From the IMG/VR virus record IMGVR_UViG_3300024503_000015, positions 62,001 to 126,000 of that record: a DNA stretch of 64,000 nt; one strand, written 5' to 3'. The translations under genes were made by a program, and so were the position numbers. A model generated the notes under the pieces. That model was not told where the DNA came from and ran no database searches. It saw nothing but the letters and a program-made list of their open reading frames with translations. Position 1 is the first letter of the stretch. Each line of letters begins with the position of its first letter. Positions 34,763-47,782 of this stretch are shown piece after piece.

Positions 34763-35097
34763 TAACTTACTCTCATTGAAGTTAGAGATACACTTAGTCG
34801 TGTATTTGCATCTGCTGTTGCCCAAATTCTTTCTTCTGAACCTAGTACAATTTTTTCTGTATCAAATGTAAATGTTTCACCTGCTGGTATTGTTAAGTTA
34901 TGAATAACTTTAGTAGTGTTAGCAATAGTAGCCGGTAAAGGTGCTAATAACCAAAGATTTAAAACAACATCCGATGTTGAATAATTGCAAAACATCATGC
35001 AGGTCACAGCATATTCTCTGTCATCAGAACCAACAGTGCCAGGGGCAGTATAAATTGCACTGCCTAGTGTAGTTACTAAATTGCTTGTGATTGCCAT
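34762..35097 (-). CDS. Small virion protein (~110-aa paralog family, copy 3)
   Basis: IYTAP...FCN....V.LNL...LTIPAGETF..EKIVL pattern. Confidence 0.55.
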   Translation of the reverse strand: MAITSNLVTTLGSAIYTAPGTVGSDDREYAVTCMMFCNYSTSDVVLNLWLLAPLPATIANTTKVIHNLTIPAGETFTFDTEKIVLGSEERIWATADANTRLSVSLTSMRVS

Positions 35098-35106
35098 GTT
35101 CTATCC

Positions 35107-36158: not shown

Positions 36159-36581
36159 TTAAACTGCAATCAATACTAATACGTCTGCTGACGAATCGTT
36201 ATCTAAATACCACTTGTACTTGTTACCGCTAAAGTCATAAGCAAGGCGCTTAGTTAATTTAGCAATAGCAGTAGTACCAGGAGTTTGACCAGTTGTAGAA
36301 CCTAAAATACGAATTTCACCATTGGCTGCTGGTGTTCCAGAAACTAGTTTACCAACTTTTAAGTTAGTACCTGTAATAGAACTGATGCTTTCTGCTTCAG
36401 TAAATGCATCATCGGATGTTTTTAAAACAACGTATGTGCTCTTGCCACGTTGTTTAACAATTTGATAGTCACTGGCTAATGAACCGCCGAAGTAACCTTG
36501 AACTAAAATACCTGCTTGTGATGTAGTAAATGAACGAGTAACTTTAGTACCGTATACATCTTTCTTTAATGGACGTCCCAT
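36159..36581 (-). CDS. Hypothetical late protein (MGRPL N-terminus), possibly capsid-associated
   Basis: Own late promoter, strong AAGGAG RBS, directly downstream of the major capsid gene. Confidence 0.6.
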   Translation of the reverse strand: MGRPLKKDVYGTKVTRSFTTSQAGILVQGYFGGSLASDYQIVKQRGKSTYVVLKTSDDAFTEAESISSITGTNLKVGKLVSGTPAANGEIRILGSTTGQTPGTTAIAKLTKRLAYDFSGNKYKWYLDNDSSADVLVLIAV

Positions 36582-36665
36582 TTGTTTTCTCCTTATGTTG
36601 ACGTTTTAGGTCTACGCAGAGGGATTCTGCATAAGTTCGCTAATGCGAATATAATTTAGACATTG

Positions 36666-46428: not shown

Positions 46429-46652
46429 AGCTCTTCAGCCTAACACTCGAAGACGCACTAAGAGTAGTTGAGGGGCTAGATAAAGAAGCAAAGTCCATAA
46501 GAACCGAATTGTTTAAATTGTGCTGGTATATGAGAGGTAGCATCACCATAGATGACGCATTTGCATTATCCTATGAAGATCGTGAAATCATATCGAATAT
46601 TATCAAAGAGAATTTAGAAACTACTAAGAAATCAGGATTACCCTTTTTCTAA
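46419..46652 (+). CDS. -1 frameshift extension of the gp26-like chaperone (gp51-like segment, 77 codons)
   Basis: Slippery heptamer T TTT TTC at 46416-46422 just before the 0-frame stop; -1 frame open to TAA 46650-46652 (FRVKLF...LCWYMRG...KENLETTKKSGLPFF) with no RBS-linked start at its 5' end. Confidence 0.7.
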   Translation, partial: FRVKLFSLTLEDALRVVEGLDKEAKSIRTELFKLCWYMRGSITIDDAFALSYEDREIISNIIKENLETTKKSGLPFF

Positions 46653-46659
46653 TACTTCA

Positions 46660-46745
46660 AGATTCACTGCGTTCATCTGTTCATCGCTTCGCTCGAACTA
46701 TTTGTTTTATTTTAATTATAGAGCATTATTAAGTGCGAAGCACTT
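46660..46745. other. Cluster of ssDNA-type mini-hairpins flanking an AT-rich tract (possible origin/priming site)
   Basis: Minus strand GTTC-GA-GC-GAA-GC-GA-T-GAAC and AGAT-GA-AC-GCA-GT-GA-ATCT; plus strand AAGTGC-GAA-GCACTT; 46699-46720 has one G in 22 nt. Confidence 0.5.
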
Positions 46746-47095
46746 TAGCATTATCCAGATTGTTCAGTCACACTTCGCCCGCACAGGGCAAAGTTAAAAA
46801 CATTATCCGAGTTGCACAATGTCACACAGCGTTAGAGCATTACAGTGGCGGTTGTCCGGTACCACGAGCTCCGTCTTATCACAACGGCGGTAAACAAATA
46901 TACGCTATCATACTTGCTTACGTGAGGTTTTTCTCCTCTCCTTGAGCCTTTTCTTCTTAAAACAGCAAAACCGCGGCAATTTGCGATCCTCGTCCTGTTA
47001 AGGATAGTTGCTGAGTACTCTTAACGGCAAGAGAATTCCGTCCCTGCGACCCGAGGTCCAGGTATAGAGCGCACGAATTTAGCCTGCGCTAGCCA
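46746..47095 (-). ncRNA. Candidate large structured non-coding RNA downstream of GIY-YIG nuclease
   Basis: At least nine hairpins; about 47% GC by hand count over 46741-47100, clearly above the flanking genes; several stems need G-U pairs that work only on the minus strand. Confidence 0.6.
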
Positions 47096-47539
47096 TTAAC
47101 CGTTTGATTTTGCCTGTGCTTGTTCTAATAAACGCTGTCTTAGTATATTTGATCCGCCTACTCTAACATTAATAATACCGTTATAGTAGTCGTCAGTTTC
47201 TAAAACCCTACGTTCGAACTGCTCTCTTGCCTCTAGATAAGACATTTCTGCCTTGGATTTGCAAAAATAAAGTATTTCTCTTGTGAATTTTTCTGGACCT
47301 AGTGCGTGGACGTCTGCTTGTAATCTCTCAGATGAGCCCCAATATTCGCGCCAATCGCTTTCTACTGTGCTACGTCTTTTGAGTTTTTTGCCTTTGAGTG
47401 GTGGTTTTGTACGCTTAAACTGTGCTAGTTTTTTGCCTATATATTTCTGTCCAGATTGGTTGTTAGTGATGAGATAAACAAAGCCTATAACGCCTTCGGG
47501 TATTTCTTCAACTAATACATTTTGATAGTGCCACGACAT
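47096..47539 (-). CDS. GIY-YIG family endonuclease (standalone, short)
   Basis: GFVYLITN...KYIGKK, Y.GSS, F.REIL..C, E...Q and YYN motifs; likely start ATG 47539 (MSWHY). Confidence 0.8.
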   Translation of the reverse strand: MSWHYQNVLVEEIPEGVIGFVYLITNNQSGQKYIGKKLAQFKRTKPPLKGKKLKRRSTVESDWREYWGSSERLQADVHALGPEKFTREILYFCKSKAEMSYLEAREQFERRVLETDDYYNGIINVRVGGSNILRQRLLEQAQAKSNG

Positions 47540-47554
47540 GCACATATATACCAG

Positions 47555-47782
47555 TTACTCTGAATCATCTTGTGTCGTTTTGGCCTTTTTGTTTAATCGC
47601 CGCTGTGCCTGTATTTCCATTCGCCTTTTTGTGCATAAATCGCGTATGTCTCGCAGATATTCGCGAGCCTGTTGACTGGATGCAAAGTATCCATAACGTT
47701 CAAATCGTTCGTTCCAGCGTGAATATTCGATAAACGCTTTAACTAACTGGTCGTGAGTGTCGTCTTTGATGTCGTCAGTCAT
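47555..47782 (-). CDS. Small basic helical protein (Hc1/histone-H1-like phage family, tentative)
   Basis: E.F..G...S..AR..L.DI..L...RR.EIQ pattern. Confidence 0.45.
   Translation of the reverse strand: MTDDIKDDTHDQLVKAFIEYSRWNERFERYGYFASSQQAREYLRDIRDLCTKRRMEIQAQRRLNKKAKTTQDDSE

What the first reader, a model, noticed from the sequence alone, without database searches (positions are those of the whole stretch)
46746..47539. Standalone GIY-YIG nuclease followed immediately by a ~350-nt highly structured non-coding RNA
Seen: in a genome whose other gaps are under ~150 nt, 443 nt (46653-47095) have no credible ORF. Read on the minus strand from the nuclease stop, the tract folds into consecutive stems: AGCGCA/TGCGCT (47068-47090), CCTG-GACC/GGTC-CAGG (47043-47062), CTCTT/AAGAG (47018-47033), a CAGCAA/TTGCTG domain (46963-47013), GAGG/CCTC (46924-46938), a 13-bp stem GTAAGCAAGTATG/TATATTTGTTTAC (46890-46921), CCGTT/GACGG (46871-46887), GAGC..GTGG/CCAC..GCTC (46835-46871) and ACTTTGCCC/GGGCGAAGT (46772-46794). 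Three stems rely on G-U pairs that would be A-C mismatches on the plus strand, which points to RNA on the nuclease strand. GC is about 47%. Known: GIY-YIG homing endonucleases normally carry C-terminal DNA-binding modules; this ~147-aa protein is little more than the catalytic domain plus a basic insert (KRTKPPLKGKKLKRR). IscB and TnpB are precedents for compact nucleases paired with an adjacent RNA. Inference: the RNA is a partner of the nuclease (scaffold, guide or substrate). I do not recognise it as tmRNA, RNase P, a group I/II intron, GOLLD, ROOL or HEARO.
Basis: partly seen in the sequence, partly recalled or inferred. Interest (0 to 1): 0.9.

Follow-up and report, generated by a model that had tools for sequence, protein, structure and literature searches.

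The report
Known phage RNA beside small nuclease
The non-coding tract after the small GIY-YIG nuclease gene is a real, elaborately folded phage RNA, but its first third is the already catalogued Polynucleobacter-1 RNA (Rfam RF01718), and the evidence does not show that it works with the nuclease.

Summary
A 149-aa GIY-YIG nuclease gene (47096-47545, minus strand) is followed within 1 nt by about 435 nt of conserved, ORF-free sequence.

- **Known family.** Rfam matches 46960-47094 to Polynucleobacter-1 RNA (RF01718, 119 bits). Weinberg 2010 already placed this motif downstream of the gene family to which this nuclease belongs.
- **New findings.**
  - The RNA continues about 300 nt beyond the Rfam model.
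  - Thirteen helices show compensatory changes; two of them are pseudoknots.
  - G-U pairs fix the strand as the nuclease strand.
  - Two direct 14-nt elements (R1, R2) stay identical to each other while changing among phages.
- **For a link to the nuclease.** In this lineage of jumbo phages related to Pseudomonas phage PA5oct, the slot upstream of the RNA always holds a small nuclease (GIY-YIG, rarely PDDEXK).
- **Against a specific link.**
  - Nuclease type and RNA 5' domain type combine freely.
  - Prophage copies and another phage carry the RNA without a nuclease.
  - Nuclease homologs in other phages lack the RNA.

I read it as an autonomous phage RNA of unknown function; partnership with the nuclease is unproven.

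The parts
47096..47545 (-). Stand-alone GIY-YIG nuclease gene. It is 149 aa from the first ATG; the probable start is M3 at 47539, giving 147 aa. The stop codon TAA is at 47096-47098.
   Evidence: - Pfam SegE_GIY-YIG E 3.5e-34; PHROG phrog_447 E 2.5e-37, whose name 'NAD synthetase' I judge a misannotation.
- GIY, YIG, R89, E105 and N122 are invariant in 35 diverse homologs.
- AlphaFold pLDDT 88.7. Best PDB match is the I-TevI catalytic domain 1LN0, probability 0.98.
- 43% identical to P-SSM2 PSSM2_218.
46960..47094 (-). 5' domain of the RNA, matching Rfam Polynucleobacter-1 RNA (RF01718) over the full model. It contains helices P1 to P5.
   Evidence: - cmscan 119.3 bits against a gathering score of 37, E 2.6e-25, model positions 1-141.
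- P1, P3, P4 and P5 have 3-5 covarying pairs each.
46747..46959 (-). 3' extension of the RNA, not covered by the Rfam model.
- Hairpins: P6 and the long P7 hairpin.
- Pseudoknot PK1: P7 loop 46902-46908 with 46826-46832.
- Pseudoknot PK2: 46881-46885 with 46851-46855.
- Helices P9, P10 and P11.
- Invariant core: GGUACCGG..ACCGCC.
   Evidence: - Conservation profile.
- Helix search and pair counts: all 7 PK1 pairs covary (82 double-change cells); PK2 has 3 of 5 covarying; P9 has 4 of 4; P10 has 72 G-U against 0 A-C.
46801..46814 (-). R1: the first of two direct elements (CAACUCGGAUAAUG). Its variable 7-mer is always the same as in R2.
   Evidence: - Mutual information of 0.5-1.17 bits with the equivalent R2 positions only.
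- Identical 7-mers in 106 of 121, 50 of 78 and 13 loci, with about 15 variants.
- At least 31 changes on the nuclease tree, nearly always in both copies (63 or 64 of 64 at each position).
46749..46762 (-). R2: the second element (CAAUCUGGAUAAUG). It differs from R1 only by AUCU in place of ACUC.
   Evidence: - Same evidence as for R1.
- No complementary partner in cis within -1600 to +1000 nt or elsewhere in the window.
46733..46743 (-). Variable hairpin with a UUCG loop (GUGCUUCGCAC), followed by an A-rich linker.
   Evidence: Alignment A1: the stem sequence varies, the UUCG loop is frequent, and the hairpin is absent in some loci.
46662..46698 (-). Two terminal hairpins conserved in nearly all RNA types. 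P12 (46679-46698) has the form stem-GAGC-GNRA-GCGAA-stem. P13 is at 46662-46676. The RNA ends 10 nt from the stop codon of the convergent plus-strand ORF (46650-46652).
   Evidence: - P12 has 4 of 4 covarying pairs and P13 has 5 of 6.
- Both are also present in the type B RNA of L237 and L251.
- There is no U-run typical of intrinsic terminators.

Best explanation
The tract is one long (about 435 nt) phage non-coding RNA. It is read from the minus strand as the last element of the gp47-gp46-nuclease transcription unit.

**What it is (shown).**
- It is an extended member of the Polynucleobacter-1 RNA family: a 5' domain (the Rfam model) plus a larger pseudoknotted 3' domain.
- The 3' domain carries two copies of a roughly 14-nt element (R1, R2).
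- The variable core of R1 and R2 is kept identical within each RNA and differs between phages.

**How I think it works (inferred).**
- It is an autonomous, trans-acting RNA. A conserved scaffold holds two identical specificity segments.
- These bind two copies or two sites of a co-evolving partner encoded elsewhere. The partner could be a protein, as the two lambda nut sites both bind N, or a nucleic acid.
- The RNA would then act as a decoy, sponge or adaptor during infection.

**The nuclease.**
- The GIY-YIG protein is an active I-TevI/SegE-type nuclease. It occupies the gene slot just upstream and is probably co-transcribed.
- Its adjacency is a conserved feature of this lineage of jumbo phages related to Pseudomonas phage PA5oct. 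It is not a requirement of the RNA family.
For: - **RNA identity.** RF01718 match at 119 bits.
- **Structure and strand.** 58 of 91 tested pairs show double changes, including two pseudoknots. G-U to A-C is 612:102.
- **Extent.** Conservation runs to about 46662.
- **Autonomy of the RNA.**
  - Full-score RF01718 RNAs with R1=R2 occur without a nuclease in L052, where a terminator-like and a promoter-like site lie upstream.
  - They also occur in 12 of 12 prophage-like loci of freshwater Burkholderiales, where the neighbour is a divergent DUF6641 gene with no recognisable nuclease fold.
- **Nucleases without the RNA.** Homologs in Melnitz, P-SSM2, phiN3 and a Variovorax phage have no RNA.
- **Modularity.** GIY-YIG+type A, GIY-YIG+type B, PDDEXK+type A and PDDEXK+type B all exist. 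Nine loci have another ORF between nuclease and RNA.
- **R1 and R2.**
  - Identity-type covariation links only these two elements.
  - The same 7-mer occurs with both nuclease families.
  - Nucleases 94% identical carry different 7-mers.
  - No cis partner was found.
Against: - In the jumbo-phage lineage, a small nuclease gene sits directly upstream of the RNA on the same strand in every evaluable locus: 113 of 121 by RNA pattern and 57 of 57 by gp46 sampling. Usually 0-20 nt separate stop codon and RNA.
- When GIY-YIG is missing, an unrelated PDDEXK nuclease takes exactly its place. Pure synteny explains this less easily than a functional link does.
- No transcript data exist. The trans partner is hypothetical. 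The decoy or adaptor role is inference only.
- Recombination could move R1 and R2 together, which would inflate the count of independent changes.
Confidence: 0.5

Rival explanations
1. The RNA is a functional partner of the upstream nuclease. It would bind the small nuclease as scaffold, regulator, substrate or guide, supplying the target recognition that the catalytic-domain-only protein lacks. R1 and R2 would be the specificity segments.
For: - Strict adjacency and shared strand in more than 150 loci.
- An unrelated PDDEXK nuclease replaces GIY-YIG at the same position in L104 and L251.
- No locus of this lineage has an empty slot.
- The nuclease has no DNA-binding domain and is under purifying selection.
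- The hypervariable R1/R2 on a conserved scaffold resemble guide segments, and these need not covary with the protein.
Against: - The RNA family exists without any adjacent nuclease, and the nuclease family exists without the RNA.
- Nuclease family and RNA 5' domain type assort independently, so no specific protein-binding module is evident.
- Other ORFs can separate the two.
- The basic insert is also present in RNA-less homologs.
- Two identical internal segments are unlike any known guide layout.
- No matching target was found in 64 kb.
Confidence: 0.2
2. The nucleases are free-standing homing endonucleases, or domesticated descendants of them. They sit beside the RNA gene because its conserved sequence is a good homing target, as T4 SegB sits in the tRNA cluster. 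The RNA has its own, unrelated function.
For: - Best matches of the protein are SegE and I-TevI homing enzymes.
- Two unrelated nuclease families occupy the same site, as competing homing genes do.
- The junction between nuclease stop codon and RNA start behaves as a recombination breakpoint, giving four combinations.
- The flanks of the module are variable small ORFs.
- The RNA is autonomous elsewhere.
Against: - No empty sites in 57 of 57 loci spanning 69-100% gp46 identity, whereas homing genes are typically sporadic.
- Catalytic residues are intact across 52-99% identity, with no decayed copies.
- There is no C-terminal DNA-binding module for long-site recognition.
- PDDEXK_15 is also a resident gene of this region in PA5oct, which lacks the RNA, so it may not be mobile.
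Confidence: 0.2
3. The RNA is a cis-acting 3' untranslated element of the operon. It would act as a stabiliser, processing platform or barrier against read-through from the convergent baseplate genes, with no trans function.
For: - It starts at the stop codon and ends 10 nt from the convergent ORF.
- No sigma-70-like promoter was found on its strand.
- Terminal hairpins P12 and P13 are conserved.
Against: - 435 nt with two pseudoknots and an invariant core is far more than a stabiliser needs.
- The same RNA sits in other positions: upstream of a tail-like gene in prophages and stand-alone in L052.
- The R1=R2 identity has no cis explanation.
- There is no terminator-like U tract.
Confidence: 0.08

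Closest known systems
Polynucleobacter-1 RNA motif (Rfam RF01718; Weinberg et al. 2010, PMC2864571)
   Same: - The 5' 135 nt match the full model at 119 bits.
- The habitat matches: freshwater samples and Burkholderiales.
- The position matches: downstream of the GOS11034/PSSM2_218 gene family.
- The function was, and remains, unknown.
   Different: - The Rfam model covers only about a third of the conserved RNA.
- Not in the family description: the pseudoknotted 3' domain, the R1/R2 pair, the type B 5' domain variant, the jumbo-phage host genomes, and the identity of the upstream gene as a GIY-YIG nuclease.
- The 2010 paper found no example in any purified phage.
OMEGA systems: IscB with HEARO/omega RNA, and TnpB with its reRNA
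   Same: A compact nuclease gene lies next to a large structured non-coding RNA, with conserved scaffold parts and variable segments.
   Different: - The nuclease fold is GIY-YIG or PDDEXK, not RuvC/HNH.
- There are no transposon ends, and the locus is fixed and syntenic.
- The variable segments are internal and duplicated, not a single terminal guide.
- RNA and nuclease occur independently of each other.
Free-standing GIY-YIG homing endonucleases of T4-type phages (SegA-G) and I-TevI
   Same: - The catalytic domain family and fold match.
- The gene sits between conserved phage genes.
- From general knowledge, T4 SegB lies among RNA (tRNA) genes.
   Different: - There is no C-terminal DNA-binding domain.
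- The gene is present in every relative sampled rather than sporadically.
Ssn family of single-domain GIY-YIG nucleases (PMC11893778)
   Same: A catalytic-domain-only GIY-YIG protein (94 aa) has its cognate nucleic-acid motifs encoded near its gene. This shows that such small enzymes can be site-specific without extra domains.
   Different: - Ssn belongs to a different subfamily (cd10448).
- It acts on single-stranded DNA hairpin repeats and does not bind RNA.
- Its motifs are short dispersed repeats, not one large RNA.
Lambdoid nutL/nutR boxB sites and type III antitoxin RNA repeats (ToxI)
   Same: Two or more RNA elements within one genome are kept identical because they bind the same specific protein, and they differ between related phages or systems. 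This is the same kind of identity covariation as R1=R2 (general knowledge compared).
   Different: - No N-like or ToxN-like protein was identified here.
- The elements lie 52 nt apart inside one large folded RNA.
- The adjacent proteins are DNA-nuclease folds.

Membership tests
Polynucleobacter-1 RNA (Rfam RF01718) | Covariance-model score above the curated gathering score, over the whole model | tested here: met
   119.3 bits against 37, model positions 1-141 of 141, minus strand 46960-47094.
Polynucleobacter-1 RNA (Rfam RF01718) | Model helices maintained by compensatory changes in relatives | tested here: met
   P1, P3, P4 and P5 are 99-100% paired with 3-5 covarying pairs each in 71 sequences.
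Polynucleobacter-1 RNA (Rfam RF01718) | Lies downstream of genes of family GOS11034 / PSSM2_218 (Weinberg 2010 supplement) | tested here: met
   The upstream gene is 43% identical to PSSM2_218, E 6e-25. The same arrangement holds in 113 of 121 loci.
GIY-YIG nuclease superfamily (SegE / I-TevI type) | Profile match above the curated cut-off | tested here: met
   PF19835 at 118 bits against 25, residues 5-125.
GIY-YIG nuclease superfamily (SegE / I-TevI type) | Catalytic motifs present: GIY, YIG, and the conserved Arg, Glu and Asn | tested here: met
   G21, Y24, Y35, G37, R89, E105 and N122 are invariant in 35 sequences.
GIY-YIG nuclease superfamily (SegE / I-TevI type) | GIY-YIG fold | tested here: met
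   The AlphaFold model (pLDDT 88.7) best matches the I-TevI catalytic domain 1LN0: probability 0.98, TM 0.68 on the target, but E only 0.09.
Free-standing homing endonuclease (T4 Seg type) | C-terminal DNA-binding module that recognises a long site | tested here: not met
   The protein is 149 aa. The catalytic domain spans residues 5-125, followed by a single helix 133-147.
Free-standing homing endonuclease (T4 Seg type) | Sporadic presence among close relatives, with empty sites | tested here: not met
   Of 57 evaluable gp46-selected loci, 56 have GIY-YIG, 1 has PDDEXK and none is empty.
Free-standing homing endonuclease (T4 Seg type) | Cuts the nuclease-less allele near its own insertion site | not testable with these tools
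   This needs cleavage assays or mixed infections.
OMEGA-type RNA-guided nucleases (IscB, TnpB) | RuvC-type (with or without HNH) nuclease | tested here: not met
   Pfam and fold searches give GIY-YIG only.
OMEGA-type RNA-guided nucleases (IscB, TnpB) | Element bounded by transposon ends and found in varied genomic sites, with a single guide at the RNA end next to the element boundary | tested here: not met
   The syntenic position is fixed in all jumbo-phage loci. The variable segments are internal and duplicated.
OMEGA-type RNA-guided nucleases (IscB, TnpB) | Obligate co-occurrence of nuclease and RNA | tested here: not met
   The RNA occurs without a nuclease in L052 and in 12 bacterial loci. 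The nuclease occurs without the RNA in 4 cultured phages.
Group I intron carrying a GIY-YIG gene | Intron core detectable and flanked by the exons of a split gene | tested here: not met
   No intron model matches, even at E 10. The RNA is followed by a convergent gene, so there is no 3' exon.
Type III toxin-antitoxin (ToxIN-like) | ToxN/AbiQ-type endoribonuclease preceded by tandem antitoxin repeats | tested here: not met
   The protein is GIY-YIG. The two roughly 50-nt units lie downstream of the gene, inside a larger RNA.

The most novel reading that the evidence does not exclude
The RNA is a programmable targeting module. R1 and R2 act as twin guide-like segments of about 14 nt that base-pair with two copies of a DNA or RNA site. 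They direct whichever small nuclease is encoded upstream (GIY-YIG or PDDEXK). This would be an RNA-guided system built on non-RuvC nucleases, used for competition between phages or for attack on the host.
Probability: 0.07. Interest if true: 0.95.

Novelty: new member of a known kind. Interest (0 to 1): 0.55.

Why it matters
- **What changes for this RNA family.** Polynucleobacter-1 has been an orphan RNA motif since 2010, with no purified phage or gene function attached.
  - This work places it in a large lineage of freshwater jumbo phages and in Burkholderiales prophages.
  - It identifies the upstream gene as a GIY-YIG nuclease.
  - It roughly triples the length of the conserved RNA and adds two pseudoknots.
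- **A concrete handle on function.** Two specificity segments are kept identical while evolving fast. This predicts a co-evolving trans partner that can be sought by pull-down or by mutating one copy.
- **Possible outcomes.**
  - If the partner is a host defence factor, this would be a new kind of phage RNA decoy.
  - If the partner is DNA and the nuclease is recruited, this would be a new class of RNA-directed nuclease.
  - If neither, it remains one more large structured phage RNA of unknown role, alongside GOLLD and ROOL.

Tried and rejected
- **Other RNA classes.** Group I or II intron, tmRNA, RNase P, known ribozymes and tRNA: no Rfam hit at E up to 10 other than RF01718, and no tRNA.
- **Protein-coding on the plus strand.** Rejected: no codon periodicity, and the ORF is open in 11 of 71 relatives.
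- **Thermodynamic significance of the single sequence.** Not significant on either strand.
- **Cultured-phage match.** blastn of the RNA against 50,697 phage genomes found nothing.
- **T4 EndoII (DenA) identity for the nuclease.** The Melnitz homolog sits after nrdB, which suggested this. Not supported: there is no PDB sequence hit, and Foldseek prefers I-TevI.
- **Mobile module in varied contexts.** Rejected for the jumbo phages, where synteny is fixed.
- **Cis partner for R1/R2.**
  - Mutual-information scan.
  - Exact reverse-complement 7-mers.
  - Pattern search of the window at chance level.
  - Wobble-tolerant 11-mer search from -1600 to +1000 nt.
  - All were negative.
- **P12 as a hammerhead core or C/D box.** The UGAUGA is only stem sequence in some members.
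- **DUF6641 as a hidden nuclease.** No fold match.
- **Prophage-type RNA pattern in viral contigs.** 0 hits.
- **Bacterial-genome scan.** By my estimate most of the 74 hits are chance matches; only 13 carry the R1/R2 architecture.
- **Literature.** Searches found no paper on this RNA after 2010 and nothing on DUF6641.
- **Not attempted.** I did not pass a long dot-bracket string to the count of structure pairs. The pair statistics were computed in scripts instead.
Full report
**1. What is at the site**

- The ORF 47096-47545 on the minus strand encodes a 149-aa protein. It matches Pfam SegE_GIY-YIG over residues 5-125 (E 3.5e-34) and PHROG phrog_447. That PHROG is named 'NAD synthetase', which I judge a misannotation.
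- The ORF lies at the end of a minus-strand block with gp46-like and gp47-like recombination nuclease genes. It faces a plus-strand baseplate-hub gene.
- Between the nuclease stop codon (47096-47098) and the stop of the convergent small ORF (46650-46652) lie 443 nt without a conserved ORF.
- This is the largest such gap in the window. GC is 45.1% here against 39.2% overall.
- The plus-strand ORF 46733-46945 has no codon periodicity and stays open in only 11 of 71 relatives.

**2. Part of the RNA is already known**

- Rfam places 46960-47094 (minus strand) in Polynucleobacter-1 RNA, RF01718. The score is 119.3 bits against a gathering score of 37, and the match covers the whole model.
- Nothing else in Rfam matches the tract even at E 10, and there are no tRNAs.
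- The supplement of Weinberg et al. 2010 (PMC2864571) states three things:
  - most examples lie downstream of genes of family GOS11034, with possible homology to PSSM2_218 of cyanophage P-SSM2;
  - the 3' half is not always detected;
  - no example was found in a purified phage.
- I fetched PSSM2_218 (145 aa, annotated 'NAD synthetase'). It is 43% identical to the window protein (E 6e-25).
- So the gene-then-RNA arrangement was already noticed in 2010, although the gene was not recognised as a nuclease.

**3. The structure is real, longer than the Rfam model, and on the nuclease strand**

- I aligned 77 copies that are less than 90% identical to one another. Their median identity to the window is 69%.
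- Conservation runs from 47094 to about 46747. A variable hairpin and an A-rich linker follow, and then two more conserved hairpins reach about 46662.
- RNAalifold predicted 61 pairs, 43 of them with compensatory double changes.
- A helix search on a more careful alignment of 71 sequences, followed by pair counts, gave 13 helices with double changes.
- Across the 19 candidate helices tested, 58 of 91 pairs show double changes, in 843 cells.
- Two of these helices are pseudoknots:
  - the loop of the long hairpin (46902-46908) pairs with 46826-46832, and all 7 pairs covary;
  - GUUGU 46881-46885 pairs with ACAAC 46851-46855, inside the loop of another helix.
- Slid-register controls fall to 14-65% pairing.
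- G-U cells outnumber A-C cells 612 to 102, and by 105:0, 99:1 and 72:0 in three helices. The RNA is therefore read from the minus strand.
One (CCGTT/GACGG) is not supported and conflicts with the second pseudoknot.
- The single-sequence folding energy is not significant on either strand (z -1.56 and -1.39).

**4. An unexpected feature: two elements that covary by identity**

- R1 is 46801-46814 (CAACUCGGAUAAUG) and R2 is 46749-46762 (CAAUCUGGAUAAUG). They differ only by ACUC against AUCU.
- Their variable positions have their highest mutual information with each other (0.5-1.17 bits). No other column comes close.
- The 7-mer after ACUC/AUCU is the same in both copies in 106 of 121 pattern-selected loci, 50 of 78 gp46-selected loci and 13 bacterial loci. 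About 15 different 7-mers occur.
- On the nuclease tree the 7-mer changes at least 31 times. The two copies are identical in 63 or 64 of 64 sequences at each variable position. Recombination could move both copies as a block, so this is an upper view of independent events.
- Each element is preceded by a GUGUGAC-like box and followed by a hairpin, which makes two tandem units of about 50 nt.
- I found no complementary partner:
  - none within the RNA;
  - none within the loci by exact 7-mer search;
  - none from -1600 to +1000 nt with wobble allowed;
  - none above chance in the 64-kb window.
- The simplest reading is that both elements bind the same co-evolving factor, which is encoded elsewhere.

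**5. How tightly the RNA is tied to the nuclease**

*For a link*
- 113 of 121 RNA-selected loci have a homolog of the nuclease directly upstream on the same strand.
- In most of the 105 loci where the nuclease is the nearest upstream gene, 0-20 nt separate stop codon and RNA; about 100 lie within -6 to +29 nt.
- I took a second sample chosen by gp46 similarity (69-100% identity), independent of the RNA. Of 57 evaluable loci:
  - 53 have GIY-YIG plus the main RNA;
  - 3 have GIY-YIG plus a variant RNA ('type B');
  - 1 has a PDDEXK_15 nuclease plus a type B-like RNA;
  - none has an empty slot.
- Type B has a different 5' domain and no RF01718 hit. It keeps the same R1-hairpin-R2 and terminal hairpins.
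- PDDEXK_15 homologs occur only in L104 and L251, exactly where GIY-YIG otherwise sits.

*Against a specific link*
- All jumbo-phage loci share one gene order, so adjacency is inherited rather than assembled repeatedly.
- GIY-YIG and PDDEXK each occur with both 5' domain types.
- Type B phages have nucleases 66-67% identical to the window's, closer than most main-type ones.
- Nine loci carry another ORF between nuclease and RNA.
- L052, a different phage with a DNA ligase, has a 96.8-bit RF01718 RNA with R1=R2 and no nuclease. A terminator-like and a promoter-like site lie upstream.
- In 12 of 12 evaluable loci from freshwater Burkholderiales genomes (Limnohabitans, Polynucleobacter and others), the RNA is divergent from a DUF6641 gene. 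Phage tail-like genes lie nearby and there is no GIY-YIG or PDDEXK.
- The DUF6641 model (pLDDT 81.7) has no meaningful PDB match, so it is not a recognisable nuclease.
- Homologs of the nuclease in Melnitz (62% identical), a Variovorax phage, phiN3 and P-SSM2 have no such RNA.
- PA5oct is the closest cultured relative by gp46 (48.7% identity) and has the same gene order. It carries a PDDEXK_15 gene in the region but no RNA.

**6. The nuclease itself**

- 92 distinct homologs are 52-99% identical, with the GIY, YIG, Arg89, Glu105 and Asn122 positions invariant. It is an active enzyme under purifying selection.
- The AlphaFold model (pLDDT 88.7) is a GIY-YIG core with a basic beta-hairpin insert (residues 42-62) and one C-terminal helix.
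- The best PDB match is the I-TevI catalytic domain (probability 0.98, E 0.09).
- The basic insert is also present in the RNA-less P-SSM2 homolog.
- Catalytic-domain-only GIY-YIG enzymes with sequence specificity are known, for example the 94-aa Ssn family, which acts on single-stranded DNA and not on RNA (PMC11893778).

**7. Interpretation**

- Shown: a roughly 435-nt pseudoknotted RNA of the Polynucleobacter-1 family on the nuclease strand. In one jumbo-phage lineage a small nuclease gene always precedes it. The same RNA family occurs elsewhere without one.
- Inferred: the RNA is co-transcribed with the nuclease. I base this on the lack of a promoter-like site and the 0-20-nt spacing.
- Inferred: it acts in trans, using R1 and R2 to bind a co-evolving partner.
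- I give about 0.5 to this autonomous-RNA reading, 0.2 to a true nuclease-RNA partnership, 0.2 to homing-type nucleases parked beside a conserved RNA gene, and under 0.1 to a purely cis-acting 3' element.
- The most novel reading is twin guide segments programming an interchangeable nuclease. It is not excluded but has no positive support beyond adjacency; I put it at about 0.07.

**8. Novelty and score**

- The window copy is a new member of a known family.
- New relative to the literature searched: the extended architecture, the identity-covarying pair, the nuclease identity, the PDDEXK alternative, the type B variant and the jumbo-phage setting.
- This is a good experimental lead rather than a new class, hence an interest score of 0.55.

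Noticed in passing
window 36579-36650 (-): A second Rfam hit: freshwater-2 RNA (RF02980, 55.2 bits against a gathering score of 49.9). It ends in AAGGAGAAAACAAAUG, directly upstream of ORF 36159-36581, so it looks like a 5' leader.
   Followed up: no
window 34826-35106: The second largest ORF-free gap in the window (281 nt). It has no Rfam match.
   Followed up: no
whole window; L198, L202: - The window comes from a jumbo myovirus related to Pseudomonas phage PA5oct, Sinorhizobium phage Phosso and Agrobacterium phage Atu_ph07 (gp46 46-49% identical).
- It shares the PA5oct gene order gp47, gp46 ... baseplate hub.
- Its gp46 is 100% identical to that of IMG/VR contigs 3300024514_000017 and 3300024356_000019.
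   Followed up: partly
L104:1669-2184 (-), L251:6439-6951 (+): In two relatives a PDDEXK_15 nuclease (PF24608; PHROG 'RusA-like resolvase') replaces the GIY-YIG gene directly upstream of the RNA. PA5oct has this gene in the same region but no RNA.
   Followed up: yes
L237:6950-7440, L256, L247, L251: A variant 'type B' RNA follows the nuclease in some relatives. It has a different 5' domain and no RF01718 hit. It keeps the same R1-hairpin-R2 units (7-mer ACGUGAA or ACAUGAA) and the terminal hairpins.
   Followed up: partly
L188:1399-1857 (-), L165, L163 and 9 other bacterial loci: In prophage-like regions of freshwater Burkholderiales, the RNA always lies divergent from a DUF6641 (PF20346, phrog_31551) gene of unknown fold. 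In L163 and L165 it lies upstream of an approximately 800-aa tail-like gene.
   Followed up: partly
L014, L035, L040, L055, L059, L064, L069, L078: An extra ORF of 228-292 aa is inserted between the nuclease and the RNA. One family is DUF6071; the others have no Pfam match.
   Followed up: partly
RefSeq phage records (e.g. NC_006883 PSSM2_218, NC_028945 gp310): Homologs of this GIY-YIG protein are widely annotated 'NAD synthetase' in phage genomes and in phrog_447. Given the SegE_GIY-YIG match, this looks like a propagated misannotation.
   Followed up: partly
window 46509-46652 (+) and 47555-47782 (-): Two small ORFs (47 and 75 aa) flank the module and match no family. The 75-aa one belongs to a cluster seen in many relatives (cluster 7). 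The neighbouring small ORFs on both sides of the module vary between phages.
   Followed up: no
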